A stretch of 64,000 nucleotides of DNA from Haliotis rubra (Eukaryota), in NCBI RefSeq assembly GCF_003918875.1, contig NW_025767081.1:434001-498000 (forward strand), given 5' to 3'. A model generated the notes under the pieces. It saw only the letters and a program-made list of their open reading frames with translations. It was not told where the DNA came from and did no database searches. The stretch's first letter is position 1; each line of letters begins with the position of its first letter. A program made the translations under genes and the position numbers. Shown here one piece after another: positions 16,514 through 58,611 of this stretch.

Positions 16514-18030
16514 ATGCTGAGGGTGACGCTTCTGCTGCTGGCGGTGACTGCCGCCCTGGCCCGTATGAATGTGTTGTTTTTAGTGTCAGATGACATGAGG
16601 CCGGAACTCTCAATTTTTGGTGGAAAAGACTTCCCCAGTCCTGTTCATCCTCCGATACATTCACCCAACCTTGACGCCCTCGCTCGGAAAAGTCTTCTGT
16701 TAAAGAGAGCCCATGTTCAGCAGGCTGTGTGTTCCCCGAGCAGATCATCTCTCCTCACAGGACGAAGACCGGACACTACCCATGTGTATGATCTACAAGC
16801 TTACTGGAGAGATGTGGGAGGTAACTTCACCACCATCCCTCAGTATTTCAAGGAACACGGCTACAGGACGATAGGATCGGGTAAGATTTTCCATCCAGGA
16901 CATGCTTCTAACTACAACGACCCGATCTCCTGGACAGACCCGTATTTTGAAGTCGGAGGTGAAGCCAACAATTTTGTATACAAGGAGCATGTTTCCTGGT
17001 TGAATGTGCCGATGGATGTTCTTAAGAACAACTCCCTTCAAGACACCCAGAATGCAGATTATGCCATTAAAATGATTAGAGAAGCAGCACCAGAGGCTAG
17101 ATCTGGAGAGCGTCCTTTCTTTATCGGTCAAGGATTCCACAAACCTCATCTTCCCTTTGTGGCACCACAGATGTTTTTTGACTTGTACCCCGAGTCCTCA
17201 ATAAGTCTTCCACCGAACCCCTACGCTCCTGATAGGATGCCGGAAATTGCATGGTCTAATTATTATACTACAGAGCTCGGAGCTTACGAAGACATTGAGA
17301 AATTACACGTTACAGGAGACATCAACACCACTCTCCCAAACGATGTCATCCTCAACTTGAGGAGAGCCTACTACAGCGCTCTCAGCTACACGGACTACGA
17401 ACTGGGACGAGTTATCCAGGAGCTGGAGAATCAAGGCCTGGCCAACAACACAATTATCTCCTTCTGGGGAGATCACGGTTGGCAACTGGGGAACACGGTG
17501 AGTGGTGCAAACACACGGACTTTGACATCGCCACCCACGCCCCGATGATGGTACATGTGCCGGGTCTCACTGACAAGGGCATTGTGACTGAAGAACTCAC
17601 CGAGTTTGTGGATCTGTTTCCTACTCTGGTAGAAGCTGCAGGTCTACCTCCTATAAATCTGTGTCCAGAAAACTCCACTAACGTTCTAGTCTGCACTGAA
17701 GGCACTAGTTTGATACCTCTGATAACAAACCCAGCAAGTCCCAACTGGAAGAAGGCTGTGTTCTCCCAGTATCCGAGGAATGAATACAACGGAAATCAAA
17801 CGGGCTACAGCATGACCACCGATCATTACAGATACACAGAGTGGGTCAAATTCAACATACAACCTGTGTACAAGCCGGACTGGACAGAAGTGTTTGGTGT
17901 GGAGCTGTACGACCATTATGGCGATCCTGAGGAAAACAAGAATCTGGCTTATGATTCCGCCTACAGTGCTCTGGTGGCTCAATTCAGCAAACAACTACAT
18001 GCTGGTTGGAGGGCAGCTTTACCCAAATAG
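16514..18030 (+). CDS. IDS: Iduronate 2-sulfatase-like secreted/lysosomal sulfatase, copy A (intronless CDS; 1-bp deletion at G-run 17488-17491; ~505 aa if corrected)
   Basis: Signal peptide MLRVTLLLLAVTAALA; SDDMR metal ligands; QQAVCSPSRSSLLTGRRPDTT formylglycine motif (human IDS has QQAVCAPSR..LTGRRPDTT); GKIFH, FHKPHLPF, GDHG, WCKH. The two ORF halves join if G4 is read as G5, as in B and C. Confidence 0.88.
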
Positions 18031-18558
18031 GAGGAAAATATAGGGATGTTTCAATCAGAGTACCTGGTGTGTTAATTGTTTGATTTTGTTGATACACTGC
18101 ACTAGACAACATTAAAACTATAGAGACAATCTAGTTTTAGAATATTTTCATATACACATGTCTGTATGTGCAGATTGTGTGAAGTGCAGAATATGCTTAC
18201 CATTATATTATATTATCTAATTTCAGCCTCCTACGTCCAGTGGAATCTGTTTCAGGGCTGCGTATGCTCTGACGCTGACATGTACTACATAATACATGTA
18301 AATATCTTGTGTGGCAAAGTCTGAGTGAAATGAAGTTTAGATTGCTGTGTATCACTGTAAATGGAAAGGAGGTGTATGAGCAGGAATTCAATGAGCAGAG
18401 TTACATCCCTTCGCTTGCACAGGATCCACAGTTACTCAGCACCCGTCCACCAGGCGCCTCTGAATCTGTTATTATAATTTCGATTATCTAGTTCTCTCTG
18501 ATTATGTCTCACGGTCTGTAAGCACCAACTATGTGCTCGTTGGTTTCAAAGACAGTGG

Positions 18559-18723
18559 AGTGAGTGAGTATGGTTTTACGCCGCTTTTAGCAATATTCCA
18601 GCAATATCACGGCGGAGGACACCAGAAATGGGCTTCACACATTGTGCCCATGTGGGGAATCGAACCCGGGTCTTCAGCGTGACGAGCGGACGCTTTAACC
18701 ATTAGGCTACCCCACCGCCCCCC
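18559..18723 (-). mobile_element. SINE family 1 between convergent sulfatases A and B
   Basis: Full length, flanked by AAGACAGTGGA repeats. Confidence 0.88.
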
Positions 18724-19771
18724 TCAAGACAGTGGAAACGTCTGAGATAATTGTATCATGTTGTGCATACCAGTCACCTGTCGTGCACTGGATAGTGTTA
18801 TTGATATAATATGTTGAAACAAAACTATTCTGTGATATTTAATAATTAAATGAGTGGTGTGTACTTATGTCGGTCTGACAGCGCTAACCCACTGGGATAC
18901 GTCAGTGTTATCCAACCAGTCACATACAATGGAATCCGAGTAAGCCTTGCTTGGGGGGCTTCACACATTGTACCCATGTTAGGAATCGAACCCAGGCCTT
19001 CGGCGTAACAAGCAAACGCTTTCTCCACTAGGCTACCCCACTGCCCCGAGTCAGGAAGAATTACAGCAGGTATAATTTTTTGTCATTGTTTGGTTTAACA
19101 CAATCGAACCGGTGAGTGAGTGAGTGAGTGAGTGAGTGAGTGAGTTCGTGAGTGAGAGCATTAACCAAAAGTTATTATGTTTTTTTCACTCTTAATCGTG
19201 ATGTAAAAAGTAGATTATACGACATATGCACTAGGGTTGCTATACCATAACTGTCCTGGACTTTGATATAACAACGGTTACTTGAGGACCCCTGAAGAGT
19301 GTTTTTATTAAATTTAATAGTTTTTTGGAAAATTTCTTGAAACGATTTATTTGTGCTTTTTATGACGTTTTTCACTTATTTGAATCCAAAACTATAGTAT
19401 ATATACATGGTGGTGTAAAATAAACACAACATACAATAGGTGCAAAAATAATTTAGTCTGCTCATTTACATATTTGTCTAAATGAAAGAACGTATGCAAT
19501 GAAAACTGGATTTTATCACAACGTTACTCCGTTTGGACAGTGTATACTTAATGGTAAAAACAGAAGTATGATACTCGTATCGAAACAGAATATCGTGGTA
19601 TAAATGTTCTTTTCATATTTAACCATCATCAAACACGCATGTTTACATTCTTTTGTTGGGCAGTTGACACAGAATGGCATTTCGTCATTTCAGAAAAAGG
19701 CGTAAGCCTTCGTAAAATGATTAAACTGAATCAAATATGGGCCTGTTGTACATCTACAATTATTTAAAATG

Positions 19772-21290
19772 TTAATTGTCCCTTGGTCTGGCAGCCCTCC
19801 ATCCAGCGTGTAGTTGTTTCCGTAGTTCAGATACAAGTTTCTTTTCAGCAGTGTTATAGGCCAAGTTAAAGTTTTCCTCGGGGTCCTTAATATGGTCGTA
19901 CAACTCAATACCATAAACTTTGTTCCAGTCCGGTTTATAGAGAGGCTTTGAGTCGAACTTTACCCACTCTGTGTATCTGTATGTATTGGTAGTCATGCTG
20001 TAGCCCATCTGGTCACCACCGTCTTCAGATCTTGGGTACTGAGAGAACACAGCCTTCTTCCAGTTGGGACTTGCTGGGTTGGTTATCAGAGGTATCAAAC
20101 TAGTGCCTTCAGTGCAGACTAGAACGTTAGTAGAGTTTTCTGGACAGAGATCAATAGGAGGTAGACCTGCAGCTTCTACCAGAGTAGGAAACAGATCCAC
20201 AAACTCGGTGAGTTCTTCAGTCACAATGCCCTTGTCTGTGAGACCCGGCACATGTACCATCATCGGGGCGTGGGTGGCGAGCTCAAAGTCCGTGTGCTTG
20301 CACCACTCACCGTGTTCCCCCAGTTGCCAACCGTGATCTCCCCAGAAGGAGATAATTGTGTTGTTGGCCAGTCCTTGATTCTCCAGCTCCTGCACAACTC
20401 GTCCCAGTTCGTAGTCCGTGTAGCTTAGACCGCTGTAGTAGGCTCTCCTCAAGTTGAGGATAACATCGTTTGGGAGTGTGGTGTTGATGTCTCCTGTAAC
20501 GTTAAGTTTGTGAATGTCAACGTACTTTCTAAGCTCTCCATAGCTAGACCATGCGATTTCCGGCATTTTATCAGGAGCGTAGGGGTTGGCTGGGAGACTG
20601 ATGGAGGACTCGGGGTACATGTCAAAGAACATCTGTGGTGCCACAAAGGGAAGATGAGGCTTATGGAATCCTTGGGCGATGAAGAAAGGACGTTCTCCAG
20701 ATCTAGCTTGAGGGGCCGCTTGTCTGATCATGTCAATGACATAGTCTGCATTCTGGGTGTCTTGAAGTGAGTTGTTCTTTAGAAGATCCATCGGCACATT
20801 CATCCAACTCACCTTTTCTTTATACACAAAGTTATTGGCATCCGACCCTGACTCAAAATATGGGTCTGTCCAGGAGATCGGGTCGTTGTTATCGGATGCA
20901 TGTCCTGGATGGAATATCTTACCCGATCCTATCGTCCTGTAGCCATGTTCCTTGAAATACTGAGGGATGGTGGTGAAGTTCCCCTCCCACATCTCTCCAA
21001 TACACCACAAGATCATACACATGGGTGGTGTCCGGTCTTCGTCCAGTGAGGAGAGATGATCTGCTCGGGGAACACACAGCCTGCTGAACATGGGCTCTCT
21101 TCAACAGAAGACTCTTCCGAGCGAGGGCATCAAGGTTTGGTGAATGCATCGGAGGATGGACAGGACTGGGGAAATCTTTTCCTTCAAAAATGGATAGCTC
21201 CGGCCTCATGTCATCTGACACCAAAAACAACACATTCATACGAGCCCGGGCGGTAGTGACCGCCAGCAGCAGAATAGTCGCCCTCAGCAT
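19772..21290 (-). CDS. IDS: Iduronate 2-sulfatase-like sulfatase, copy B (intronless; 1-bp insertion at C-run 20981-20984; 505 aa if corrected)
   Basis: ATG at 21290 (MLRATILLLAVTTARA); all catalytic motifs present; span 1519 bp versus 1518 bp for intact copy C; GGGG versus GGG at the VGGNF codons. Confidence 0.88.
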
Positions 21291-22991
21291 GATGATCTTT
21301 AAGTCATAGCAGGTTCCACCTGACGAGTGAGGATTTATGTATTTTCGAGCCTGTGAAGTTAGCAGCAGATTCTTATCAGTTCTGATATGGATATGTTTGA
21401 ATATACCTGTGGCATGGCCTTGACCAATCGTGATCATGTGTATTGCTGACAACGGGAAACTATTATCTCGTCGAGCGTTTCTTACACACACGTTAACTAG
21501 GTCATCCTCAACTTATATAATATCCAAAATGAACTTATGTAATATCTAAAATCATTTTTTTAGACACACTAAATATACCTCGCAAATTCCATTTTAGAGT
21601 CATAAGACTTGTTTTGCATTTGCAGAGTCAATTATACGGTTTCAATTATATTATGACCATGTGTTTTTGAATTACTTTGAAATAGTGTTGATACAAGGTG
21701 GTCACTAAAAGGTGAACATATGCTTCACGACCCACAAACACATACAAAGGATAGTAAAACGGAATATCGATTTTCATCGGATATCACTTTTGTCAGTCAC
21801 GCATGATTTTTTGGACAAACTGACCTATGAACGCAGTATAAACATGGAAAAATACACAATATACAATACACAATGATAATACAATACAGTATAAACACGA
21901 GTCATACATAGACCTAGGTATGAAATAAAGAATATACCGGTTTTGGATGATTATTTAACAAAAAACAACGTAACGCAACATATGTAACTTGTACGTCACA
22001 GTTAAAACACTTTAAAAATACCTTTGCTGTTTTTAATTCTAAAGCCAAAACACAACGGTTGGTACAGTATAATTGTAAAAGACCAAATGAAAGATATGTT
22101 TATGAATAGTTTTCAAATATACAGTCACCTAAAACAAGGAGTGAGTGAGTGAGTGAAGAGAAAGGAGAACAGAGTCAATGACACCACGTAATTGTGACTA
22201 TCAGATTTTCATTCTATCGCTCTTACAACATACATAGGTAAACAGGCCTTATCTGTCATGGAATTTCCCGCGAGACGATACCTTTATGTGACCTTGTCAT
22301 AAAGTGGGTTAATAGCATGTGTGTATTTTCATCAGATATTACCCAACTTGAAAATCCTGGTGCCTCGTGCGTATCTAATGTAATCGTTTTTGTTTTACGC
22401 CGCACTCAGCAATGTTCTAGCCATATGGCGACGGTCTGTAAAATTGGACCGGGCAATTCAGTGATCAACAGCATGAGCATTGATCTACGCAACTGGGATA
22501 CGATGACATGTGTCAAGTCAGCGAACCTGACCACCCGATCCCGTTAGTCGCCTCTTACGACAAGAAAGGGTTACTGAAGACCAATTCTAACCCGGATCTA
22601 ACTACTAACGGGATCGGGTGGTTAGGTTCGCTGACTTGACACATGTCATGCGTAGTTCTATGCTCATGATGCTGATCACTAGATTGTGTGGTCCAGACTC
22701 GATTATATACGGGCCACCGCCATAGCTTTGAAAAACAAAGCCATGCCATCTCAACCCCACGTTGCTGATAATGTCAACCACTGGTTTGGCGAACCCAGAC
22801 TTCATTATCAACAGGATGTCCTCAAACAGAATGAATATTGTTGACTGCAACACAAGAAACAAAATATACCGAGGGAAACAAATAAGTGAACACCACTTCA
22901 TGGCAGTGTTCCTTTATTTATTCTCAGATTTCCTCCCACAGCACTATTCAAAGCTGGTGATGAAAACTGTAAAATATTAAAGGAACGCTTG

Positions 22992-23327: not shown

Positions 23328-23480
23328 ATTGAGTTTAGTTTTACGTCGCTTTAGCAATATTTCAGCAATATCACGGTGGGGACACCAGAAATGGGCTTCA
23401 CACATTGTACCCACGTGGGGATTCGAACCTATTCGGCGTGACGAGAGAACGCTTTAACCACTAGGCTACCCCACCGCCCC
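23328..23480 (-). mobile_element. SINE family 1 at the junction between duplication units B and C
   Basis: Reverse copy; its homolog at ~18955-19047 marks the start of unit B. Confidence 0.85.
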
Positions 23481-24234
23481 GAGTCAGGAAGAATTACAGC
23501 AGGTCTAATATTTTGTCATTGTTTGGTTTTACACAATCGAACCGGTGAGTTCGTGAGTGAGTTCGTGAGTGAGTGAGATAGTGAGTTCGTGAGTGAGTGC
23601 ATTAACCAAAAGTTATAATGTTTTTTTCACTCTTAATCGTGATGTAAACAATAGATTATACGACATATGCACTAGGGTTGCTATACCATAACTGTCCTGG
23701 ACTTTGATATGACAACTGTTACCTGAGGACCCCTGAAGAATGTTTTTATTAAATTTAATAGTTTTTGGAAAATTAAGTGAACACATTATTTCTTGATACG
23801 ATTTCTTTTTTTTATTGCTTTTTATCACGTTCTTCGCTGATGTGAATCCAAAACTATAGTATATATACATGGTGGCGTGAAAATAAACACAACATGAAAA
23901 GGATGCAAAAATAATTTAGTCTGCTCTTTCACTTATTTGTCTAAATGAAAGAACGTATGCAATGAAAACTGGATTTAATCACAACGTTACTCCGTTTGGA
24001 CAGTGTATACTTAATGGTAAAAACAGAAGTATGATACTCGTATCGAAACAGAATATCGTGGTATAAATGTTCTTTTCATATTTAACCATCATCAAACACG
24101 CATGTTTACATTCTTTTGTTGGGCAGTTGACACAGAATGGCATTTCGTCATTTCAGAAAAAGGCGTAAGCCTTCGTAAAATGATTAAACTGAATCAAATA
24201 TGGGCCTGTTGTAAATCTACAATTATTTAAAATG

Positions 24235-25752
24235 TTAATTGTCCCTTGGTCTGGCAGCCCTCCATCCAGCGTGTAGTTGTTTCCGTAGTTCAGATACAAG
24301 TTTCTTTTCAGCAGTGTTATAGGCCAAGTTAAAGTTTTCCTCGGGGTCCTTAATATGGTCGTACAACTCAATACCATAAACTTTGTTCCAGTCCGGTTTA
24401 TAGAGAGGTTTCCTGTCAAACTTCACCCATTCTGTGTATCTGTATTTATCCGTAGTCATGCTGTAGCCCATCTGGTGACCTCCGTCTTCAGATCTTGGGT
24501 ACTGAGAGAACACAGCCTTCTTCCAGTTGGGACTTGCTGGATCTTTCATCAGAGGTATCAAACTGTTGCCTTCAGTGCAGACTAGAACGTTGGTGGAGTT
24601 TTCTGGACACAGATTAATAGGAGGTAGACCTGCAGCTTCTACCAGAGTAGGAAACAGATCCACAAACTCGGTGAGTTCTTCAGTCACAATGCCCTTGTCT
24701 GTGAGACCCGGAACATGCACCATCATAGGGGCGTGGGTGGCGATGTCAAAGTCCGTGTGTTTGCACCACTCACCGTGTTCCCCCAGTTGCCAACCGTGAT
24801 CTCCCCAGAAGGAGATGATTGTGTTGTTGGCCAGGCCTTGATTCTCCAGCTCTTGGACAACACGTCCCAGCTCGTAGTCTGTGTAACTGAGGGCGCTGTA
24901 GTAGGCTCTCCTCAAGTTGAGGATGACATCGTTTGGGAGTGTGGTGTTGATGTCTCCTGTACCGTTAAGTTTCCGAATATCAACGTAGTTTCTAAGCTCT
25001 CCATAGCTAGACCATGCGATTTCCGGCATCTTGTCTGGAGCATATGGGTTAGCTGGGAGACTGACGGAGGACTCTGGGTACAAGTCAAAGAACATCTGTG
25101 GTGCCACAAAAGGAAGATGAGGTTTGTGGAATCCTTGGGCGATGAAGAAAGGACGTTCTCCAGATCTAGCTTGAGGGGCCGCTTCTCTGATCATGTTAAT
25201 GGCATGATCAGCATTCTGGGTGTCTTGAAGTGAGTTGTTCTTCAGAAGATCCATCGGCACATTCATCCAACTCACCTTTTCTTTATACACAAAGGTATTG
25301 GCTTGCGACCCTGACTCAAAATATGGATCTGTCCAGGAGATCGGGTCGTTGTTATCGGATGCATGTCCAGGGTGGAAAATCTTACCCGATCCTATCGTCC
25401 TGTAGCCATGTTCCTTGAAATACTGAGGGATGGTGGTGAAGTTCCCTCCCACATCTCTCCAATACACTACCAGATCATACACATGGGTTGTGTCCGGTCT
25501 TCGTCCTGTGAGGAGAGATGATCTGCTCGGGGAACACACAGCCTGCTGAACATGGGCTCTCTTCAACAGAAGACTCTTCCGAGCGAGGGCATCAAGGTTT
25601 GGTGAATGCATCGGAGGATGGACAGGACTGGGGAAATCTTTTCCTTCAAAAATGGATAGCTCCGGCCTCATGTCATCTGACACCAAAAACAACACATTCA
25701 TACGAGCCCGGGCGGCAGTCACCGCCAGCAGCAGAAGCGTCACTTTCAGCAT
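24235..25752 (-). CDS. IDS: Iduronate 2-sulfatase-like sulfatase, copy C (intact, intronless, 505 aa)
   Basis: Single uninterrupted ORF with signal peptide, CSPSR motif, DD, GKIFH, HKPH, GDHG..GEHG.W.KH, ELYD...DPEE..NLA C-terminal motif, and several N-x-S/T sequons. Confidence 0.95.
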   Translation of the reverse strand: MLKVTLLLLAVTAARARMNVLFLVSDDMRPELSIFEGKDFPSPVHPPMHSPNLDALARKSLLLKRAHVQQAVCSPSRSSLLTGRRPDTTHVYDLVVYWRDVGGNFTTIPQYFKEHGYRTIGSGKIFHPGHASDNNDPISWTDPYFESGSQANTFVYKEKVSWMNVPMDLLKNNSLQDTQNADHAINMIREAAPQARSGERPFFIAQGFHKPHLPFVAPQMFFDLYPESSVSLPANPYAPDKMPEIAWSSYGELRNYVDIRKLNGTGDINTTLPNDVILNLRRAYYSALSYTDYELGRVVQELENQGLANNTIISFWGDHGWQLGEHGEWCKHTDFDIATHAPMMVHVPGLTDKGIVTEELTEFVDLFPTLVEAAGLPPINLCPENSTNVLVCTEGNSLIPLMKDPASPNWKKAVFSQYPRSEDGGHQMGYSMTTDKYRYTEWVKFDRKPLYKPDWNKVYGIELYDHIKDPEENFNLAYNTAEKKLVSELRKQLHAGWRAARPRDN

Positions 25753-26502
25753 GATGATCTTTAGGTATTGCAGGTTCTACCTGACGAGAGAGGATTTATG
25801 TATCTTCGAGCCTGTGAAGTTAGCAGCAGATTCTTATCAGTTCTGATCTGAATATTTTAGAATATATGTGTGGCATGGCCTTGACCCATCGTGATCAGGT
25901 CTATTGCTGACAACGTGAAACTATTATCTCGTCGATCGTTTCCTACACGCATAGACGTCACGTTTATACAAACTGGGGTAACTTTAACTTATATAATATC
26001 TAAAATAATTTCCTTTTTTAGACACACTAAATATACCTGTCAAACTCCATTTTAGAATCATGAGACTTATTTTTGCATTTTCAGAGTCAACTATACGGTT
26101 TGAACTATATCATCAGCATGTGGTTTTTTTATATAGTGTTGATACAAGGTGTTAGCTAAAAGGTGAGCATATCCTTTCCTACCGTTTTCGCGGGTCACAA
26201 ACACATTCAAAGGTTAGTAAAAAGGAATATCGATTTTCATCGGATTTCAATTTGGTAATTGAATCACTCATGAAATTCGAATAAACTGACCTATGGAACA
26301 GTATTGACATGACCTAGGTATGAAAGAAAGAATATACCTGTTTTGGAGGATTATTTATCAAAAACAACGTAACACAATGTATGTAAATTGTACGTCAAGT
26401 CAAAACACTTTTCAAAATATTAATCCCCAAACCACATGTGTATAGTTTCTTTTCTACGTCAGTTTATAATATCTAGATTGGGAATGCAGAGCTCGTAAAT
26501 TT

Positions 26503-34205: not shown

Positions 34206-34813
34206 ATGTGGAGTCAGGTTGTGTGTTTGTTTCTGACCGTAGTCTGTGTCTCAGGACAAGCTGATTTAGGTCACAGTTACACTGTTGACAAACAACCTTT
34301 GAATGAAACAGCTTTGTTTGTGGCCGACGCTCTGTACAAACACCCCAAACTGTTCCGGAAGTTGTTAAACATCAGCGCTGCAATGCAGCCATTCTTGTCA
34401 GAGATCGATGACCCGAAAATATCTGTCATGTTCGATCATTTCCTTGATGTCCTTCCTGCGATGCTGCGGTCAACCTACTTCATCAACGCCGTGCATGTCG
34501 TTGCAGATGAGCTGCATGGCGTCAACGTTAGCGACGTGTTCGACTACCTCCAGAACAACCATTTTTCCCCTGACGACCCTGCTGCTAGACAGATGGTGAC
34601 TGGTGCTGTCTTCGATAGGGTGGACAAGGTGAGGACTCTTCAAAGACTCCTCACTCTCAGTAGCGCCCGTGACATCCTTCCCCCTCACCGCCAACGACAG
34701 TGTCACACCACGTTGCTACAGTCACATGATGAACTTCGTCGACGCAGTTGCCGGTGTACAGGTCCCACCAAGAGGGGACATGAACTTCACCTTGGTACCT
34801 TGGGCACTGAAAA
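34206..34813 (+). CDS. Exon 1: signal peptide, N-terminal helical region and start of the NRF domain
   Basis: MWSQVVCLFLTVVCVSG signal peptide; after a 1-bp shift in the C-run it continues LTANDSVTPRCYSHMMNFVD...PWALK; donor A|gtaagt. Confidence 0.75.
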
Positions 34814-40800: not shown

Positions 40801-43800
40801 GGAAACGTAAAACATGGACTTTACTGAGGAGAGATTAGTGCAGAAATGAGCAATGTGGTTTATTTTGTAAGTCCAAAGCGACTTATTTGGAACAGACCAT
40901 GGCTTTATGCAAATTAGTGTGTGGTATTGTATAACAAAGGACACTTTTTAAATGCCCATTTTGAAATTAGACTTGGCTTAATTATAAACGATAGCCGACG
41001 TAAAAAAATGATTTTAATACTGAAACTAAGGATGTAGCTGCAATGGAGTCACACTATCACTTTAAAAAACAAGTAGGAGGGGTCGTCTCAAAAGCAAAAC
41101 CAGGACGGGTGTCTCAGACGGTTGTTGGGGTCGGGCGGGTTAATAGAGATATCACTGAGATAGAATATAACTTTATGAAAGACACGTTAGGTGTTAAGCA
41201 ATAGATGAGACATGAACGCAAAACAAAAAGCATAAAATATCTTTGAGATGAGCCCCTTGTGCCTGTAGGCAGCACATGCATTTTATGCCAGGTGAGTCGT
41301 CATACCTGGCTGAGCGACCTTGTTGCCATCTATAGTCGGATCTATTGTTTTAAACAGCTATTCGTACTTTTTCTAAGTTTATATCCGATTTCACGAGTAA
41401 ACATGCTTTTCTGGATATCTTATTAGCATCCCACTGAACGCCCAGTTAGGCCGATGTGGGTTATTGGAACATATTCGAATTCTGTTTGTAATTGTGTAAA
41501 GTTTAGGGATACAGTGTAACAGCCTATTTCCGACCGTACTGTAGTGCTTCTGTAGGACAAGTCTTCCTGACCTGTAACATCCTGGTTTGTACAAAACATC
41601 ATTTTGAAGTGCATTTTGGTTATGTGTAGATTGCGAGACAAAATATGTAACTAATATGTAGATGTTCTTAAATATATTTTATATATTGCAGGTTTTATGA
41701 AAAAATTCAAGATAACCCCTGATAATGTCTCCTGTTCAGACAGTCAGAAGCATAATGGTCATGTGCACGTCACATCCGGTACGACCACGTGAGTACATGG
41801 CATCCAGGATACCTCCGTGATAAGAGTCGATCATGTCTGAGAAATATTCTTGACCTATTAATATCGGGTTATATAACTGGTGTTCAGGAGGCCGGACCCT
41901 GTTCCTCAAAGCGATCGTAGCGCTAAGATGATTGTAACACCCATCCTCCCATTACGACAGTCGTAGCGCTAAGATGATTGTAACACCCATCCTACAACAG
42001 TCGTAGCGCTAAGATGATTGTAACACCCATCCTCCAACAGACTTACGACAGTCGTAGCGCTAAGATGATTGTAACACCCATCCTCCAACAGACTTACGAC
42101 AGTCGTAGCGCTAAGATGATTGTAACACCCATCCTCCAACAGACGTACGACAGTCGTAGCGCTAAGATGATTGTAACACCCATCCTCCAACAGACTTACG
42201 ACAGTCGTAGCGCTAAGATGATTGTAACACCCATCCTCCAACAGACTTACGACAGTCGTAGCGCTAAGATGATTGTAACACCCATCCTCCAACAGACTTA
42301 CGACAGTCGTAGCGCTACGATCGCTTAGAGGAGGGGGACCCTGGGCCCACCTGCACAAAGCGATCTTGTAGCGACTATCTAAGATGATTGTAGTTACGAC
42401 GCCTAAGATCCTTTGTGCCCCAACAAGCTGGTTTGGCACTTGGAACGACAGTCGTAAAGAAACATGTTAAAACATCCTTATAAGACAGAATATATAAAGG
42501 ACTCACATAAACCCTAGGGGGATCACATAAACCCTAGGGGTAAAAATACATAAATCACTAACTGGCATCGTTATAAATGAAACCCCGTCATTAAAACTAC
42601 TCATTTCGACCTTTAATTGACTTAAATCGACCTTTTTGACAACAGTGCACAATTCTCACCCGCGAACGAAATTTCAACCAATCAGAGCGGCGCGACTCTG
42701 TGACGTCATATGAGGAATAGCTTTGAGGGCCGATGCAGAATTCATCTACATTTTAGGGGTAAATTATCTTGTTTACAGGCTTGTATAAACCTGAAATCGT
42801 GACAATTGTTGTGGAAAATGAAAGCTATATGTTCTCACAATCTACTGTCATTTAATTTTGTCTCCTGCTTTGCCTAGTTTCCGAGTTACAACTTGTTTTC
42901 ATAGACGCTTCTGTCACAATTGATTGGTGTCGTTAGGCCCTATTTGTATAATGACTGATCCAAATTGATCCCATTTCTGTGTTTTTTTACCTCGATATTT
43001 AATCATGTCATGTAAAAATCTGTTTGTATTCTCAAAACAGTGTCGGCCCATAAGTTTTCACATGCAATACAGCAATTAATACTCCCTTGTTGTAACCCGT
43101 GTTAGGTGGTATAAACCTACACATGTTATTTGTCATCATTCACTTGATGGTCAGTTAATGAATTTATAACAGGTATAATTAGTGGTAACACACTTAGATT
43201 ACCCGACAAAGGTTCCCATTTGGCATTTCTTGTGTCTGGAGTAAATATTCAACATTATAAACATCGATCAAAGGATTAACCGATAACACGCTGATTGATT
43301 AATTACTTTTATCTTACACAGAGGAATTGTCAAAAGGTAGTGTTTATGTATGTAGATTTACTAATCTATACTGAATACACTCTGCCGTGTCGGTGTCTGC
43401 GTAAAAACAACGTCCTTCTTTCAAAGGATTAACCGGCAATACATTGATTGATTGCCCATTATTGGCTAACTAAATTACTGTTTTTAATGAAAGGCGGACA
43501 TTATGCAATTAGTTGCCAGGTGTGCTATCTTGGGTGACCAATGAGACTATACACCAATACCTGAAAAGATTTATCACTTTTTTCGTATATTAAACTGTTA
43601 AAAGACACATCATTTGGAACAGTTTTGTGGATATTGATGGATACATTCCTCAAACAAGGTAATGGCCTGATATTGTTCCTATAACTTTAATCTGTTTTAA
43701 TTTTAATATTTGCATTTTTTTTTTTATTCATTTGTCGTAGCATTCAACAGAATCATTGTTTTCGCCGTGAAGTGTAATGAGACAGACAACATACACTAGG

Positions 43801-46800
43801 GTGTGTGTGCGAATTATGATTCACATTGGCAAACTATAAAATGTCTAGATATTACAGTTCTGTTATAAATTCACTATAAGTATCAGCAGATCGTCAGCTT
43901 TTTATTTAGTTTCAAAATGCATAAAAGTATGATAATAAACTAATTAGGATTATAAGACCAAACATAAAGACGCACATTGACTAGTATCTACATACTGGTG
44001 AGTGGACATTAACCATGTGAATGTAGCAAGAAATTTATCGCGCAGTATTGTGACTTCGACCCCACCTCGCTTCCGTGGAAGAAATCGTTATGTTATAAGT
44101 TGTGTCATGCAAAATCCTTTTGGTTATGATTCCAATACATATTTAACTACGAGTAGAAAGTAGTTTTGATTTTCTAACTTGATGAAAACAAACTATAATC
44201 TCATTAATTCTAACAGACTTTACGATTTTCAAAAATGGCGGCGCCCTGTCGGGAACATCCGCCAGTCTGTGGATAAATGCTATTTAGGTTTGTTTTCACC
44301 GAGTTACAAAATCAAAACTACTTTCTACTGGTAGTAAAATATGTATTTTTTATTGATGGCCAATAGGATTTTGCATGACATAGCGTATAACATAACAATT
44401 TCTCCTGGCAGCGAGGTGGGTGTCAATATAATACTACTTACAATATTATTGTTACTTCGACCACAACCTCACTTCCAAGGAAGAAATCGTTATGTTACAA
44501 GTTGTGTTATGGAAAATCTTTATGGTCATCAATCATATACATATTTTACTATAACTAGTAAGTAGTTTTGATTCTTTAACTTCCGTGAAGCGATCTGAAC
44601 ACAAGTAAGATATCGTTTCAGGCTTCCACAACGCTCGCTTCGCACTCACAAACATAACCCATTTAGCACGAACTGCGGGGTCCTGTGGAAATCTGTGCAT
44701 GGTGACACCATCACCCGACCCCTAGGAGCAATTGACGACAAAGCAACGATTCGGCATGTCGTCGTTCATGTCGAGAAATCATCAAAATGATGAGCGTGCT
44801 ACACACTTTCTATACAACTAACTGAAAATCGTTCCTCATATGACGTCACTGCAGTGCTCTGGCGACAGAGTTACGTAACCTGTCTGTGGTTTCGTTGGCG
44901 GGCGAGAGGGAAGCAGGTGACTTTTTGGCCACTTTTAATCGCTCGGTATTAATTAACCACAAGTTTTTAAAGAATAACTTTGGTGTTCCGCATAAGACTA
45001 ACCACAAATCTTTCATATGTAATGGTTAAAAGAGTAACAAAAAACAAAGTTTAGTGGTTCTTTAAAGCGTTGGCTCGTCACGCCGAAGACCCGGGTTCGA
45101 TTTCTCACATGGGTACAATGTGTGAAGGCCATTTCTGGTGTCCCCCGCCGTGATATTGCTGGAATATTGCTAAAAGCGGCGTAAAACTAAACTCAGTCCT
45201 CATTTATAGAATGAATTCTTGTGAACAAGTCAGGGAAGTGGGGTAGCATACTGGTTAAAGCGTTCGCTCGTTGCGCCGAAGACCCGGATTCGATTCCCGA
45301 CATGGGTTCACTGTGGAGACCATTTCTGGTGTCCCGCGCCTGAATGAATGGTGCATGAATATTGCTAAAAGCTGTGTAAAACTATACTCTAATCGTCACG
45401 ACCGACATATTTCCAGTCGACCCAGTGTTGCAACAACAAACGCCTTCGACTTGCTTATAAGGTCATATTCTGACTGCAAAGATCGGATCAGGCCAGACGA
45501 ATTGATGAACTGTTTGTTCTCTCCCTGTGACATCGACAGTGAGTACCTTTCCAGAAATACCAGGCCTACCAAAGAAAACTTTCCCACTGTGCAGAAAAAC
45601 GCAGAAAAGCCCACATTAATCGTGGAAATAGCAACATAAACATAATACCTCGCTACTGAAACAGTGAAAACGGCAACTTTAAATCGCTAACACTGCATCA
45701 TAAAACGAGGAGCCCGCAACTTCGATTTTGCGCATGCGCACATGGAAGAGGAAGTCTCGACCGCATGTTGACATTTTCCAGCTTGGACAAAAGTTACATT
45801 TCTTTTTAAGTATTTCTGTTGTGTTATTTGTCATTTATCATCATGATACTTGTGTGCACACTTGTTTAGTTTACTTTCCATTCGTATGAAACAACTGACA
45901 GCGATTATTTCGACATATTTAATACTTTTTTTACGCGAGGCGATTCACGGTTGCTCGGAAATTGGAAAGAAGCCCGGATCGTAATGCACATGCGCAGTAG
46001 AGGTCAAAGTTCGCTGATTACTATGAAAGCTATGAAAATGTTGCAGTTTCATAGTTTTTCGTTGCAGTTTTTACTGTTTCAGTAGCGAGGTAATGTGTTT
46101 ATGTTGCTATTTCCACGATTAATGTGCGCTTTTCTGCACAGTGGGAAAGTTTTCTTTGGTAGGCCTGTATACCTAGTTGCCAGATCTATACAGAAGTGAC
46201 TGGGGTAGCCTAGTGGTTAAAGCGTTAGCTCGTGACGCCGGAAACCCGGGTTCGATGGGTACAATGTGTAAAGGACCTGGTGTCCCCTACTGCGATACTG
46301 CTTGAATATTGCCAAAAGCGGCGCCATGAATGCGTAAAGCTTTAATCGATATTTAGGAATCACAATAGCACTGGGAAAGGGCGTAGTTTATAGTTACCTC
46401 CTTGGAATCACGTCATGTTGACAGTGAAAAAAAAGGTTAAAGTCTCCTTTGCCATACATAGCTTTGTTTTGCAGAAAATGGTAACATCAGCAAGCGCGAA
46501 TGGCAGACAGAAAGCCACAGACTTGGAATGGACATGGCTGACCATGGAAAGATTGCGCGAACCTTCATCGAGTTGGACATTAACAAGGACCTCCAAATAG
46601 ACGCACCTGACCTCGAGTATCTCTTTGCCTTCTTTGACGACACCGGTGAGAGGTCCCCTTTTCGACATCCATTCCACAAGACTAGAAACGTTTTATTACA
46701 AATGTTAACACAGTAACTTGAGTCCTTTGGCTAGAATGACACGCAAGTGTGGCTTGAAATGGAGAGAGCAATAATATTATTTTCCCTTTTTCAGGCGACG

Positions 46801-46853
46801 GGCTTCTCAGCCTTCCGGAGTACATTTACAATTGGCAGTCTCTCATCTCGTAG
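34206..46853 (+). CDS. Predicted 7-exon gene: secreted NRF-domain (NRF-6 N-terminal-like) plus EF-hand calcium-binding protein, ~447 aa
   Basis: Exons 34206-34813, 35628-35839, 39217-39292, 41692-41788, 45417-45538, 46475-46645, 46795-46853; all introns GT-AG with phases 1,0,1,2,1,1 matching; needs removal of one C in the C5 run at 34680-34684; AATAAA at 46941. Confidence 0.7.
35628..35839 (+). CDS. Exon 2: NRF domain core
   Basis: ttttcag|TG completes WALK-M-LDSYGKLPSGIYERNLHWQGSPGEC...FKGKYC, the NRF-6 family motif D..GK.PSG...N..W.G...EC; donor ATG|gtatgt. Confidence 0.85.
37530..37838. repeat. MITE whose interior expanded into a 45-bp minisatellite (~6 units)
   Basis: TIRs TCCTCGATAATCTCCAGGGTATACGTTA and TAACGTATACCCTGGAGATTATCGAGGA enclose tandem CTCCAGGGTATACGTTACGATCACTCTCCACTACTATTATCTAAT. 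Confidence 0.85.
39217..39292 (+). CDS. Exon 3: NRF domain C-terminal motif
   Basis: ttttccag|DDALTWGMCVPDTCSEKDVEGLFQL-G|gtaggt; G.C.P..CS..D is the NRF-6 family motif. Not present in the supplied ORF track. Confidence 0.85.
41692..41788 (+). CDS. Exon 4: end of NRF domain and start of Thr-rich linker
   Basis: tattgcag|(G)FMKKFKITPDNVSCSDSQKHNGHVHVTSGTT-AC|gtgagt; phase 1 in, phase 2 out. Confidence 0.7.
41895..42340. repeat. Harbinger-like MITE expanded into a 51-bp minisatellite (~8 units)
   Basis: Unit GACAGTCGTAGCGCTAAGATGATTGTAACACCCATCCTCCAACAGACTTAC bracketed by inverted AAGCGATCGTAGCGCTA and TAGCGCTACGATCGCTT. Confidence 0.85.
45417..45538 (+). CDS. Exon 5: linker and start of EF-hand domain
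   Basis: atttccag|T-RPSVATTNAFDLLIRSYSDCKDRIRPDELMNCLFSPCDID-A|gtgagt; phase 2 in, phase 1 out. Confidence 0.75.
45561..46167. mobile_element. Non-autonomous DNA transposon with ~120-bp imperfect TIRs in intron 5
   Basis: CAGGCCTACCAAAGAAAACTTTCCCACTGTGCAG... and ...CTGCACAGTGGGAAAGTTTTCTTTGGTAGGCCTG. Confidence 0.85.
46475..46645 (+). CDS. Exon 6: EF-hand motifs
   Basis: ttttgcag|AA completes the canonical loop DIDKNGNISKRE; second loop DINKDLQIDAPD; ends FFDDT-G|gtgag. Confidence 0.85.
46795..46853 (+). CDS. Exon 7: last EF-hand and stop codon
   Basis: ttttttcag|GC completes DDTGDGLLSLPE-YIYNWQSLIS-TAG; AATAAA at 46941-46946. Confidence 0.85.
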
Positions 46854-51985: not shown

Positions 51986-52019
51986 ACACGCCCCTGTGGT
52001 CAGTACTGTGATCACATCG

Positions 52020-52760: not shown

Positions 52761-52979
52761 CAAAGTAATCGCCCAAAAAACCCCATAACAACCCCAGACA
52801 CGCCACGTTGGGTTAGTAGTCCGTGCAACACAACACAAGCAACACATTGCAAAATAATACAATATTTTAAACTGACCGTATTCTTAGCTTACCTTGATAA
52901 TATTATTGGTATGATCAGTTTTCAAAAGACAGAACAAAGATGAAACCGTTGCTACTGTAGCCCGATATCTACCAATATA

Positions 52980-55242: not shown

Positions 55243-55787
55243 TGAGTGAGTGAGTTTAGTTTTACGCCGCACTCAGCAATATTCCAGCTATATGGAGGCG
55301 GTCTGTAAATAATCGAGTCTGGACCAGACAATCCAGTGATCAACAGCATGAGCATCGATCTGCGCAATTGGGAACCGATGACATGTGTCAACCAAGTCAG
55401 CGAGCCTGACCACCCGATCCCGTTAGTCGCCTCTTACGACAAGCATAGTCGCCTTTTACGACAAGCATGGGTTACTGAAGACCAATTCTAACCCGGGACC
55501 TCGGTAATTCCAGTATGAACCAGGAAAGCCACGACAAGCATCTTATATTTGGGACGGTGTTGCTGGTTATTGTTTAACGCCGAACAAAGGAATATGTCAG
55601 CTACATGGCGGCGTTCTGAAAATAATGTGGACCAGGCAATCCAGTGATCAACAGCATGAGCATCGATTTCCGATGTGATACGATGATGTCTCTCAACCAA
55701 GTCAGCAAGTCACCCGATCCCGTTAGTCGCCTCTTACGACAAGCATGGGTTACTGAAGATCAAGTTCTAACCCGGATCTTCACGGGT
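55243..55787 (-). mobile_element. Two adjacent family 2 retroposons (~55243-55500 and ~55560-55787)
   Basis: Both carry the structured 5' head and the GGAATATT...GGCGT(A/T)AAAC tail. Confidence 0.85.
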
Positions 55788-57100
55788 TTGATTCTGTATT
55801 ATATATTATGTTTCTGAGTGGATAATATTGAAGTTATATCCCAGTGGGTTAGCCATATAAAACCGGCATACGGTTATACCAGGCTAGCATCACGAAACGT
55901 TCGTGGGCCTACGAACGTCTTTCGCCCATTTCAACAAATTGGCTTTAACAAAGTTAAGAATTCTTAGGGCTACGATCTTTTCGAGAATAAGGACCCAGGA
56001 CCAACAGCCACAAACATATATTTGTGGTGGCGCGAGGTCCTGTGCATAGAACTCAGATCACAAATCAGCTCAAGTAAAGCAACGTTGAGCTTGACTCCTG
56101 AGAGTTTTAGGACTTCAGTCCTGCCCCCACAACGAAATACATGTTATGCATGTGGTCTCACCTTAGGCACGTGAGTTCATCCACCAGAAAATGGGTACCC
56201 TGTGGGATATGTCAAATGACTATAACCTTCTAGCACCTAACAGGCAGCTTGGGCTATCCGGGGTAATAATGTTGTGGTGTTTGTGCGCGCTTTGAGCATA
56301 CCCCTTTGTAGTGTGGAGTATTGCGCGGTAAGTACCGCTCAGTATAATTTAAAAACCGAACGCGTTATATAAGTAAATTGACGATGAACCGGAATTTCCT
56401 ATCACCCCAACCTCTCTGGACGCTGGTTTAGTTCTACTCAATGTCCTCCTTAGTTCTTAAAAATGATTAAAATCGTTTAAGGATACTGTTTTAGTAACAT
56501 TATGCCGCGCATTGCAGGTGAATGAAATGCACAATATGATACAATTGCCTCAGAGGTTTCCATTGTGGCGAAACCCACGAGCACATACTTGGTGCTTAAA
56601 GACCGTGAGACATAATCAGAAAGAACTAGACAACCGACGTTATGATGACAGGTTCAGGGTCGCCTAAATGACGTGCTGACAGACATTGATTGCGGATCCT
56701 GAGTCAGCGAAGGGATGTAACCATGCACATTGAATTCCTGGCCCTACATCCCCTCTCAGTTTACAGTGATACACAGCAATCTTAAACTTCACTTCACTCA
56801 GATTTTGCCACACAAGATATTTACATGTATCATATACAAGACGCCATCGTCAGAGCTCAGCAGTCCAGGGCCTAGATTTTCGAAGCTCTCTTTGCGCTAC
56901 ATTGGATGTACTATACTACTGTTGTTCGCTAAATTGTAAGCATTTACTGCACTTCGGGCAAGCTGCATATATATACATTTATGCATATGTATATGAAATT
57001 GAACCAACTGCATATTGTCTAGATACTTTAATATTGCCAAGATCGGAGTGAAACAAAAACAAACAACTGATTTATATACGTCATCAGGTTTGGAAATGTC

Positions 57101-58611
57101 CTATTCGGGTAAAGCTGCCCTCCAGCCTGCATGCAGTTGTTTGCTGAGTTGAGCCACCAGAGTGCTGTAGGCGGCATCATAAGCCAGGTTCTTGTTTTCC
57201 TGAGGATCGCCATAATGGTCGTACAGTTCCACACCAAACACTTGGGTCCAGTCCGGTTTGTACACAGGTTCTAGGTTGAATTTGACCCACTCTGTGTATC
57301 TGTAATGATCGGTGGTCATGCTGTAGCCCATTTGATCTCCGTTGTATTCATTCCTCGGATACTGGGAGAACACAGCCTTCTTCCAGTTGGGACTTGCTGG
57401 GTTTGTTATCAGAGGTATCAAACTAGAGCCTTCAGTGCAGACTAGAACGTCGGTGGAGTTTTCTGGACAAAGATTAATAGGAGGTAGACCTGCAGCTTCT
57501 ACCAGAGTAGGAAACAGATCTACAAACTCGGTGAGTTCTTCAGTCACAATGCCCTTGTCAGTGAGACCCGGCACATGCACCATCATCGGGGCGTGGGTGG
57601 CGATTTCAAAGTCCGTGTGTTTGCACCACTCACCGTGTTCCCCAGTTGCCAACCGTGATCTCCCCAGAAGGAGATGATTGTGTTGTTGGCGAGTCCTTGA
57701 TTCTCCAGCTCCTTGATAATTCGTCCGACTTCGTAGTCCGTGTAGCTGAGAGCGCTGTAGTAGGCTCTCCTCAAGTTGAGGATGACATCGTGTGGGACTG
57801 TGGTGTTGATATCTCCCGTAAGATTTAATTTCGCAATGTCATCGTATAATCTGAGCTCTGTATAATTAGTCCATGCGATGTCCGGCATCTTATCAGGAGC
57901 GTATGGGTTGGCTGGAAGTCTGATGGAGGACTCGGGGTACATGTCAAAGAACATCTGTGGTGCCACAAAGGGAAGATGAGGTTTGTGGAATCCTTGAGCG
58001 ATGAAGAATGGACGTTCTCCAGATCTAGCTTGAGGGGCTGCTTCTCTGATCATTTTAATCGAATGGTTATTATTCTGGGTGTCTTGAAGGGAGTCGTTCT
58101 TAAGTGCATCCATTGGCACGTTCATCCAGGAATTATGCCCCTTGTATACAAAAAAAGTTGAGTTAAACCCTACTTCAAAATACGGGTCTGTCCAGGAGAT
58201 CGGGTCGTTGTGGTTAGAAGCATGTCCAGGGTGGAAAATCTTTCCAGCTCCTATCGTTCTGTAGCCGTGTTCCTTGAAATACTGAGGGATGGTGGTGAAG
58301 TTACCTCCTACTTCTCTCCAGTAAGCATGTAGATCATATACATGGGTAGTGTCCGGTCTTCGTCCTGTGAGGAGAGATGATCTGCTCGGGGAACACACAG
58401 CCTGCTGAACATGGGCTCTCTTTAACAGAAGACTCTTCCGAGCGAGGGCGTCAAGGTTTGGTGAATGTATCGGAGGATGTACAGGACTGGGGAAGTCTTT
58501 TCCTTCAAAAACAGAGAGTTCCGGCCTCATGTCATCAGCCACTAAAAACAACACATTCATACGAGCCTGGGCGGCTGTCACCGCCAGCAGCAGAAGAGTC
58601 ACCCTCAACAT
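57101..58611 (-). CDS. IDS: Iduronate 2-sulfatase-like sulfatase, copy D (intronless; 1-bp deletion at C-run 57640-57643; ~503 aa if corrected)
   Basis: Signal peptide, ADDMR, CSPSR, GKIFH, HKPH, GDHG, WCKH; C-terminus and 3' flank (~56570-56970) are homologous to copy A. Confidence 0.88.

What the first reader, a model, noticed from the sequence alone, without database searches (positions are those of the whole stretch)
16514..58611. Array of four intronless secreted IDS-like sulfatases with conserved catalytic core and hypervariable loops
Seen: four paralogs within 42 kb, each a single coding exon with all catalytic motifs. Differences cluster in a few segments: EVGGEANNF/ESGSDANNF/ESGSQANTF/EVGFNSTFF, SNYYTTELGAYED/SSYGELRKYVD/SSYGELRNYVD/TNYTELRLYDD, DLQAY/DLVVY/DLVVY/DLHAY and RNEYNG/RSEDGG, while long stretches are nearly identical even at DNA level. 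Established: vertebrate IDS is a multi-exon lysosomal gene, and its sulfatase subfamily (S1_7) also includes marine bacterial enzymes acting on algal polysaccharides. Inference: a retrocopy (or transferred gene) was amplified and its substrate-facing loops diversified, plausibly as a host-encoded toolkit for desulfating dietary seaweed glycans.
Basis: partly seen in the sequence, partly recalled or inferred. Interest (0 to 1): 0.75.

Follow-up and report, generated by a model that had tools for sequence, protein, structure and literature searches.

The report
Abalone IDS-like sulfatase gene array
This stretch of blacklip abalone DNA holds four intron-free copies (one intact, three broken by single-base frameshifts) of a secretory-pathway sulfate-removing enzyme from an old sister family of the human Hunter-syndrome enzyme; it is an ordinary but instructive birth-and-death gene array that may help digest sulfated sugars, which was not tested.

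Summary
The window is Haliotis rubra scaffold QXJH01000400.1. It holds exactly four paralogs of a single-exon, signal-peptide-bearing formylglycine sulfatase (S1_7, IDS-like), each with every catalytic residue.

Only copy C (24235-25752, minus) is an intact 505-aa ORF. A and D share a 1-nt deletion (G5 to G4). B has a 1-nt insertion. Independent short-read contigs carry both lesions.

They are not hypermutating. Silent divergence is also raised there, pN/pS is 0.26-0.98, and no loop or pair shows pN>pS. Orthologs in H. rufescens keep the same copy-specific loops.

The near-identical stretches come from gene conversion: codons 20-120 and 290-400 group by species, codons 415-505 by orthology.

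The origin is neither a recent retrocopy nor a bacterial transfer. The intronless, tandem family also occurs in limpets, bivalves, annelids and homoscleromorph sponges. It is sister to canonical IDS, which abalone keeps as a 16-kb multi-exon gene.

A dietary role is plausible but untested. The scan already found the adjoining 11 copies of this array. Verdict: new member of a known kind, moderate interest.

The parts
16514..18030 (+). Copy A: IDS-like sulfatase, single exon, disrupted by a 1-nt deletion. Ortholog of H. rufescens P0003.
   Evidence: ORFs 16253-17548 and 17479-18030 overlap in different frames. G4 stands where other copies have G5. Orthology comes from synteny and the C-terminal tree.
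17488..17491 (+). G4 run: frameshift site of A (codon 324, just after GDHGWQL).
   Evidence: Logan contigs of runs X1 and X2 (same organism) show no extra G here. X4 and X13 (other organisms) do.
16426..16471 (+). Proximal promoter of A: TGATAAG (GATA-type site) at -88 and CATAAAT (TATA-like) at -49.
   Evidence: Both motifs are invariant in position in 10 copies from 2 species. Homology is lost upstream of about -95.
19772..21290 (-). Copy B: young tandem duplicate of C, disrupted by a 1-nt insertion.
   Evidence: ORFs 19772-21091 and 20919-21491. B-C dS is 0.18. The extra G is shown.
20981..20984 (-). G4 run (other copies GGG or GGT): frameshift site of B (codon about 103).
   Evidence: In X1, X2 and X4 about half the contig depth lacks one base here and half keeps it. 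That fits B carrying the insertion and C-derived contigs lacking it.
24235..25752 (-). Copy C: the only intact gene, 505 aa, with signal peptide and full catalytic set. Ortholog of H. rufescens P0001.
   Evidence: Pfam Sulfatase 2.1e-43, SGSH_C 1.2e-13. (human IDS 5fql, 3.5e-95). (AF2 pLDDT 91.7). (TM 0.85 to IDS).
25794..25839 (-). Proximal promoter of C, with GATA-type site and TATA-like box.
57101..58611 (-). Copy D: A-type copy on the far side of the NRF/EF-hand gene, carrying the same 1-nt deletion as A.
   Evidence: ORFs 57101-57652 and 57583-58611. G4 run at about 57640-57643. A-D dS is only 0.04 around the site.
18956..21846 (.). Duplication unit holding B. It is a direct repeat of 23393-26311, which holds C.
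   Evidence: Self-BLAST: 2945 bp at 90.4% identity.
23393..26311 (.). Duplication unit holding C.

Best explanation
The four genes are one end of a large tandem array on an H. rubra scaffold, with at least 10 copies seen here and about 15 if earlier scan notes are counted. The array encodes single-exon, formylglycine-dependent sulfatases of subfamily S1_7.

Shown:
- The proteins have the IDS fold and every catalytic residue, plus an N-terminal hydrophobic leader.
- They belong to an old intronless family, sister to canonical iduronate-2-sulfatase, that sits in tandem arrays in molluscs, annelids and homoscleromorph sponges.
- Abalone also keeps a separate multi-exon canonical IDS.
- The array evolves by birth and death. 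The B/C duplication is specific to the H. rubra lineage. Three of the four copies here, and one neighbour, are disrupted.
- It also evolves by gene conversion, which homogenises the catalytic core within each species.
- Four short cleft elements and the C-terminal subdomain keep old, copy-type-specific sequences that are conserved between species.

Inferred:
- The family lacks the canonical cleft features: the Cys171-Cys184 hairpin, Arg273 and the long Lys479 loop. These enzymes therefore probably do not act on iduronate-2-sulfate of heparan or dermatan sulfate.
- They more likely act as exo-sulfatases on other sulfated sugars, with copy types differing in substrate.
- The compact GATA-plus-TATA promoter and the long-known glycosulfatase and fucoidan-sulfatase activity of mollusc digestive glands make dietary polysaccharide desulfation the most likely role.
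- The shared G4 lesion of A and D was most likely spread by a conversion tract.
For: - Identity of the window and intact copy.
- Family membership: Pfam, PDB by sequence, AF2 plus Foldseek (best hits human IDS, then the S1_7 ulvan sulfatase 6hhm).
- Catalytic residues invariant across 40 family and IDS sequences.
- Frameshifts. Read-level support.
- Purifying selection: pairwise dN/dS 0.09-0.28.
- Gene conversion: sliding dS and incongruent region trees with 99-100 support.
- Loops: pN 0.15-0.39 against 0.03-0.09, with pS also raised. Orthologs keep loop sequences, pN/pS 0.21-0.38.
- Loop mapping to IDS substrate contacts.
- Phylogeny: with clade labels.
- Intronless tandem arrays in other phyla.
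- Canonical multi-exon IDS in gastropods, abalone included.
- Promoter.
- Mollusc fucoidan-sulfatase activities known, sequences unknown: PMC6315715.
- Contigs of a run guessed to be RNA lie on the coding sequence and repeats only.
Against: - No substrate, tissue or expression data for these genes. The one RNA-like run is a guess, comes from another organism, and its contigs are only 92-95% identical.
- Sponges, filter-feeding bivalves (including freshwater Dreissena) and deposit-feeding annelids carry the family. The link to macroalgal grazing is therefore not specific.
- Loop-to-cleft mapping rests on sequence alignment to human IDS and a docking study, not on measured distances in a model of this protein.
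- The conserved TTCACAG just upstream of the TATA-like box could instead be a splice acceptor of a 5'UTR intron.
- Many sequences in the IDS-like superclade are unnamed, so its taxonomic span and the root are not secure.
Confidence: 0.7

Rival explanations
1. Ongoing positive (diversifying) selection drives the substrate loops apart, as in a repertoire. The reader's 'hypervariable loops' are adaptive hot spots.
For: Loop pN/pS is about twice that of the rest of the gene and approaches 1 in pairs involving D. In the H. rufescens pair, codons 121-180 show dN 0.13-0.15 against dS 0.08-0.09. Earlier scan notes on other arrays of this genome report such sites (not tested here).
Against: No loop in any pair has pN significantly above pS (Fisher p at least 0.23). 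pS in the loops is itself 0.4-0.97 between copy types, so the divergence is old. Orthologs across species keep the loops (0.21-0.38). D is frameshifted, so its near-neutral ratio may be decay.
Confidence: 0.15
2. The enzymes serve endogenous glycosaminoglycan or mucus turnover in lysosomes (housekeeping or tissue remodelling), not digestion of food.
For: The closest characterised relative is lysosomal IDS. The family occurs in animals that do not graze seaweed. A mussel study reads digestive-gland sulfatases as lysosomal (PMC5549309).
Against: Abalone keeps a canonical IDS for that task. The substrate-contact residues of IDS are replaced. Large tandem arrays with frequent pseudogenes are atypical of housekeeping lysosomal enzymes. 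In molluscs intracellular lysosomal digestion of food is itself a digestive route, so the two readings overlap.
Confidence: 0.2
3. All four genes are intact. The three single-base indels in G runs are assembly or polishing errors.
For: All three lesions lie in G homopolymers. The downstream frames of A and D remain open for 183 codons. A contig of another organism laid at A's site has G5.
Against: Short-read unitigs of two runs from the window's own organism carry G4 at A's site with no G5 variant laid there. The B insertion is present in about half the depth in three runs. Seven other copies in the same assembly were called G5 correctly. NCBI's models for these loci are truncated (P0004, P0131). 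The runs may be the assembly's own input, so this is not fully independent.
Confidence: 0.1
4. A recent retrocopy of abalone's own IDS, or a gene acquired from marine bacteria, was amplified in the abalone lineage.
For: The genes lack coding introns while canonical IDS has them. S1_7 includes bacterial algal-polysaccharide sulfatases (PMC5066984; 6hhm).
Against: C is only 39-41% identical to abalone canonical IDS but 60-68% identical to family members of limpets, bivalves, annelids and sponges, which are also intronless and tandem. The family is sister to, not nested in, canonical IDS, and lies outside the bacterial clade. The best bacterial hits are 31-42% identical. An ancient retroposition at the base of animals is not excluded.
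Confidence: 0.03
5. The shared G4 in A and D is a recoding signal (frameshifting or transcript slippage) that still yields full-length enzyme.
For: The same lesion is in two copies that differ elsewhere, and the downstream frame is open.
Against: A-D dS is 0.04 around the site, so one conversion tract explains the sharing. No slippery heptamer or other recoding signal was noted at the site, and none was searched for. All other copies use G5. The A-site contig of a related organism has G5.
Confidence: 0.02

Closest known systems
Human iduronate-2-sulfatase (IDS; PDB 5FQL, 6IOZ), SulfAtlas subfamily S1_7
   Same: Same fold (TM 0.84-0.85). Same catalytic set: Asp-Asp, Cys-x-Pro-x-Arg, Lys/His, Asp-His, Lys. 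Same two-subdomain build and the Cys422-Cys432 disulfide pair (C382, C392 invariant).
   Different: Only 36-37% identical over the structure. Lacks the Cys171-Cys184 hairpin and the roughly 20-residue Lys479 loop. Has Tyr/Phe for Arg273 and His/Gln for Tyr348. Single exon and tandem instead of multi-exon and single-copy. It falls in a sister clade, not the IDS clade.
Formosa agariphila ulvan sulfatase FA22070 (PDB 6HHM), bacterial S1_7
   Same: Third-best structural and sequence match. It shows that S1_7 enzymes act on algal polysaccharides.
   Different: 29% identity. Bacterial, and encoded in a polysaccharide utilisation locus. The abalone family is not nested among the bacterial sequences sampled.
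Intronless ARSB-like sulfatase arrays of the same abalone genome (earlier scan notes) and the arylsulfatase B expansion in scallop (PMC5159873)
   Same: Tandem, signal-peptide sulfatases in a marine mollusc, proposed to digest sulfated algal glycans. One scan note reports the same picture of concerted evolution with retained loops (not tested here).
   Different: A different S1 subfamily (S1_2-like rather than S1_7).
Mollusc glycosulfatase and fucoidan-sulfatase activities (abalone hepatopancreas 1967, Patella vulgata 1971, Pecten maximus 2001; cited in PMC6315715)
   Same: Same animals and a plausible match of activity to gene family. From memory, the Pecten enzyme removes the 2-O-sulfate of L-fucose, which would parallel the 2-O-sulfate of L-iduronate.
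   Different: Those activities have no sequences. No link to these genes has been shown.

Membership tests
Type I formylglycine-dependent sulfatase (SulfAtlas S1, Pfam PF00884) | C/S-x-P-x-R motif carrying the formylglycine precursor | tested here: met
   CSPSR is present in all four copies. C73, P75 and R77 are invariant in 40 sequences.
Type I formylglycine-dependent sulfatase (SulfAtlas S1, Pfam PF00884) | Metal-binding and catalytic residues (human IDS D45, D46, K135, H138, H229, D334, H335, K347) | tested here: met
   D26, D27, K124, H127, H212, D318, H319 and K331 are invariant.
Type I formylglycine-dependent sulfatase (SulfAtlas S1, Pfam PF00884) | Alkaline-phosphatase-like alpha/beta fold with a C-terminal beta-sheet subdomain | tested here: met
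   Pfam Sulfatase 2.1e-43 and SGSH_C 1.2e-13. AF2 pLDDT 91.7. At least 441 PDB chains match at E up to 0.001; the 50 best listed are sulfatases or the related phosphonate monoester hydrolases.
Type I formylglycine-dependent sulfatase (SulfAtlas S1, Pfam PF00884) | Cys converted to formylglycine by FGE; sulfate ester hydrolysis | not testable with these tools
   Needs protein chemistry.
SulfAtlas subfamily S1_7 | Closest characterised relatives are S1_7 members | tested here: met
   The top three PDB matches by sequence and by fold are human IDS (two entries) and the S1_7 ulvan sulfatase 6HHM. SulfAtlas's own HMMs were not available.
Canonical iduronate-2-sulfatase (ortholog of human IDS) | Falls inside the holozoan IDS clade | tested here: not met
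   It lies in the sister clade. The IDS clade has 100/96 support and the IDS-like clade 98/92. Abalone has its own canonical IDS, P0341.
Canonical iduronate-2-sulfatase (ortholog of human IDS) | Substrate-cleft features: Cys171-Cys184 hairpin, Arg273, Lys479 loop, Tyr348 | tested here: not met
   These are absent or replaced across the whole IDS-like family. They are present in Biomphalaria, echinoderm, shrimp, fish and choanoflagellate IDS.
Recent processed retrocopy | Intronless copy closely similar to an intron-bearing parent in the same genome | tested here: not met
   The copies are intronless. They are only 39-41% identical to the abalone parent candidate, and the family is shared with sponges and annelids. 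Poly(A) remnants and target-site duplications were not examined.
Horizontal transfer from bacteria | Nested within a bacterial clade, with high identity to bacterial genes | tested here: not met
   The best bacterial matches are 31-42% identical. The bacterial sequences form a separate clade. The bacterial sample is small.
Multigene family under concerted evolution (gene conversion) | Paralogs within a species closer than orthologs between species over part of the gene, with incongruent region trees | tested here: met
   Codons 20-120 and 290-400 group by species (support 99-100). Codons 415-505 group by orthology (support 100). Sliding dS agrees.

The most novel reading that the evidence does not exclude
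These arrays encode the long-sought molluscan glycosulfatases or fucoidan sulfatases. Those activities have been known from abalone, limpet and scallop digestive glands since the 1960s without any sequence. The array's architecture would then be functional: selection keeps a small set of old substrate-loop 'cassettes' from being erased, while gene conversion maintains a shared catalytic core. Each copy type would desulfate a different dietary sugar, for example the 2-O-sulfates of L-fucose, xylose or uronic acids. More broadly, an intronless sister family of IDS would be a general marine-animal tool for feeding on sulfated glycans, dating back to early animals.
Probability: 0.3. Interest if true: 0.6.

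Novelty: new member of a known kind. Interest (0 to 1): 0.4.

Why it matters
Marine animals eat large amounts of sulfated polysaccharide, yet the animal enzymes that remove the sulfate have never been tied to genes. This family is a concrete candidate. It is old, intron-free and tandemly amplified in several phyla. It is distinct from the lysosomal IDS that all these animals also keep, and its substrate cleft is remodelled.

The locus is also a clean example of how gene conversion and birth-and-death evolution together produce 'conserved core, variable loop' mosaics. Such mosaics are easily mistaken for hypermutation or positive selection.

For annotation, three of the four copies here are pseudogenes. 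'Iduronate 2-sulfatase-like' should not be read as iduronate sulfatase activity.

Tried and rejected
- **Haplotype duplicates:** rejected. Divergence is 5-15%, the flanks are distinct, and there are separate orthologs in H. rufescens.
- **Extra fragments in the window:** none. tblastn finds exactly four copies.
- **Bacterial origin:** the genome-contig scan gave only 31-42% identity.
- **Labelling unnamed representatives:** The listing of cluster members gave few names. I located the canonical IDS clade instead by scoring representatives against 5FQL. P0264, P0149 and P0279 turned out not to be canonical IDS.
- **Measuring loop-to-active-site distances:** not possible, because no coordinates are returned for the AF2 model. 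I used alignment to 5FQL plus the docking contacts in PMC5472762.
- **Raw-read check of frameshifts and expression:** only Logan contigs were available, with no raw reads and no run on record as RNA. Transcript ends, strand and the 5'UTR could not be read.
- **Literature on IDS-like sulfatases in abalone:** no paper holds both 'iduronate 2-sulfatase' and 'abalone'. Other searches returned only general sulfatase or fucoidan work.
- **Pairwise tests for pN>pS in loops:** none significant.
- **tRNA scan:** nothing found.
- **Handling of the frameshifts:** they were read through in scripts with N at the break (A, D) or with the surplus base dropped (B), for alignment only. No stop-spanning protein was sent to a tool by reference.

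Full report
**What is in the window**

The window is eukaryotic, about 41% G+C, and contains no N. The exact protein of the one intact copy is on record on a 1,013,842-bp contig. That contig is Haliotis rubra GCA_003918875.1, scaffold QXJH01000400.1. tblastn with this protein finds exactly four sulfatase copies and no further fragments:
- A at 16514-18030 (+)
- B at 19772-21290 (-)
- C at 24235-25752 (-)
- D at 57101-58611 (-)

All four are collinear over their whole length with 505-aa single-exon proteins of H. rufescens.

**Check of the observation**

The four paralogs, the catalytic motifs and the quoted variable strings are real. Only C, however, is an intact ORF.
- A and D have a G4 run where B, C and seven further copies have G5, directly after GDHGWQL.
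- B has an extra G in the run after RDVG.

Only Logan contigs could be laid; no raw reads were available.
- In two runs of the window's own organism, the contigs at A's site carry G4 with no inserted G.
- In contigs of two other organisms laid there, a G is inserted.
- At B's site, about half the depth in three runs lacks one base and half keeps it. This is expected if C-derived contigs are laid on B.

I therefore take the lesions as real in this animal. A's lesion looks young. B's may be shared with a related organism. One neighbouring copy has an in-frame stop. A-D synonymous divergence is only 0.04 around the shared lesion, so one conversion tract is the simplest explanation for the sharing.

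**What the protein is**

- Pfam gives Sulfatase (2.1e-43) plus SGSH_C (1.2e-13).
- The best solved relatives by sequence are human IDS (5FQL, 3.5e-95) and the S1_7 ulvan sulfatase 6HHM.
- An AlphaFold model built on a 40-sequence alignment has pLDDT 91.7. It matches IDS at TM 0.84-0.85, then 6HHM.
- All catalytic and metal-binding residues are invariant.
- The N-terminus is a hydrophobic leader ending in Ala-Arg-Ala, read as a signal peptide. This is sequence inspection, not a prediction tool.

**How the array evolves**

In H. rufescens the syntenic place holds P0003(+), P0001(-), a 192-aa gene and the NRF/EF-hand gene. A is therefore the ortholog of P0003, and B and C are co-orthologs of P0001. 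B and C are a 2.9-kb tandem duplication at 90.4% identity.

Whole-gene dN/dS is 0.09-0.28. Synonymous divergence is strongly mosaic.
- Between A and C it is 0.1-0.3 over codons 41-120 and 300-400.
- It is above 1.3 or saturated over codons 121-180, 221-260 and 421-505.

Region trees are incongruent.
- Codons 20-120 and 290-400 group all eight H. rubra copies against both H. rufescens copies (support 99-100).
- Codons 415-505 group by orthology (support 100).

This is concerted evolution by gene conversion. It explains the 'long stretches nearly identical even at DNA level'.

**The variable loops**

I aligned the loops to human IDS and read the docking contacts in Demydchuk et al. 2017 (PMC5472762). 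The mapping, in C numbering, is:
- C 248-258 aligns to Asp269-Arg273.
- C 421-427 aligns to the SD2 loop bearing Lys479.
- Positions 95-96 align to human 106-107, whose role is unknown.

In 39 loop codons, pN is 0.15-0.39 against 0.03-0.09 elsewhere. pS is also 2-3 times higher, and pN/pS is 0.26-0.98 against 0.10-0.27. No loop in any pair has pN significantly above pS. Ortholog pairs give 0.21-0.38. For example, SSYGELRNYVD is identical in C and H. rufescens P0001.

The loops are thus old, copy-type-specific and conserved. They have either been spared by conversion or been protected from it. They are not hypermutating.

**Origin**

- Family members 60-68% identical to C occur in limpets, bivalves, annelids and homoscleromorph sponges.
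- Where I looked (Patella, Pinctada, Owenia) they are single-exon and tandem. Oscarella has an array of four genes with compact 1.7-1.8-kb ranges; one gene model there does not translate collinearly, so single-exon status is not shown for Oscarella.
- A careful tree rooted on bacterial sequences recovers a canonical IDS clade. It holds choanoflagellate, Biomphalaria, echinoderms, shrimp and fish. I labelled it by scoring against 5FQL and by source names.
- A sister IDS-like superclade holds the abalone family.
- H. rufescens keeps a canonical IDS of 590 aa spread over 16.4 kb on another chromosome-scale contig. It is only 39-41% identical to C. Biomphalaria IDS spans 6.9 kb.
- Bacterial relatives found were 31-42% identical.

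A recent retrocopy or a bacterial transfer is therefore rejected. An ancient retroposition at the base of animals remains possible.

The IDS-like family lacks the Cys171-Cys184 hairpin, Arg273 (Tyr/Phe instead), Tyr348 (His/Gln instead) and the long Lys479 loop. All are present in canonical IDS from choanoflagellate to fish. This argues for a different substrate.

**Regulation and function (inferred)**

Ten copies from two species share a roughly 95-bp proximal region. It has an invariant TGATAAG at about -88 and a C/TATAAAT at about -49. Homology ends just upstream. I read this as a compact GATA-plus-TATA promoter, which would suit endodermal expression. A splice acceptor at the conserved TTCACAG cannot be excluded.

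A run guessed to be RNA, from another organism, gives contigs on the coding sequence and on repeats but not on unique intergenic DNA. This is weak evidence that the family is transcribed.

Fucoidan-sulfatase and glycosulfatase activities of abalone, limpet and scallop are old observations without sequences (PMC6315715). This family is a candidate for them. Its presence in sponges, filter feeders and freshwater Dreissena shows the role cannot be specific to seaweed grazing.

**Relation to earlier scan notes**

The scan had already found the adjoining 11 copies of this array. It read them as an old sister family of IDS (s1-349425). It had also noted the G5-to-G4 lesion (s1-329687). ARSB-like intronless arrays with concerted evolution were reported elsewhere in this genome. 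My independent tests agree on the first two points. The ARSB arrays were not examined here.

**Verdict**

This is a real, partly decayed segment of a large IDS-like sulfatase array. It is a new member of a known kind, of moderate interest.

Noticed in passing
window 6433-7209 (+): A 258-aa single ORF with Pfam PML_C (3.7e-16) and RNase_T exonuclease (1e-05). It resembles a PML C-terminal DEDDh exonuclease, here in a mollusc.
   Followed up: no
window 34206-46853 (+): The gene between C and D starts with a signal-peptide-like ORF at 34206-34817 that has no Pfam hit. Its H. rufescens counterpart is called as a 453-aa NRF-domain plus EF-hand protein. It is the subject of another scan note (s1-329465).
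   Followed up: no
window 18400-19200 and 22000-22200: A very high-copy interspersed repeat sits between A and B and upstream of B. Contig depth there is thousands of times that of the flanks, with many joints linking the two places.
   Followed up: no
window 15220-15724; 37537-37777; 41993-42321; 61646-62057: Four minisatellites: a 26-bp unit x 19.6 about 800 bp upstream of A; a 45-bp unit x 5.4 and a 51-bp unit x 6.5 (both 98% matches) inside the NRF/EF-hand gene span; and CTCCA x 86 near the window end. The last produces long Ser/Pro/Leu/His-rich pseudo-ORFs on both strands.
   Followed up: no
L023:10001-20566 (H. rubra scaffold QXJH01000400.1, about 515-525 kb): The NCBI model P0127 spans 10.6 kb and does not translate collinearly. 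It appears to join two neighbouring sulfatase copies. The copy at about L023:19055-20566 has an in-frame stop (VILN*RRAYY).
   Followed up: partly
L002:1684-3246 (H. rufescens JALGQA010000013.1): A third sulfatase-like stretch lies upstream of P0003 in H. rufescens. It is 84% identical to copy A but is not called as a gene and gave no intact ORF of 300 aa or more. It is probably another pseudogene.
   Followed up: partly
L003:2143-9613 (Oscarella lobularis OX382150.1): Four IDS-like sulfatase genes stand head to tail within 7.5 kb in a homoscleromorph sponge, 64% identical to the abalone protein. That is unusually high for a sponge-mollusc pair.
   Followed up: partly
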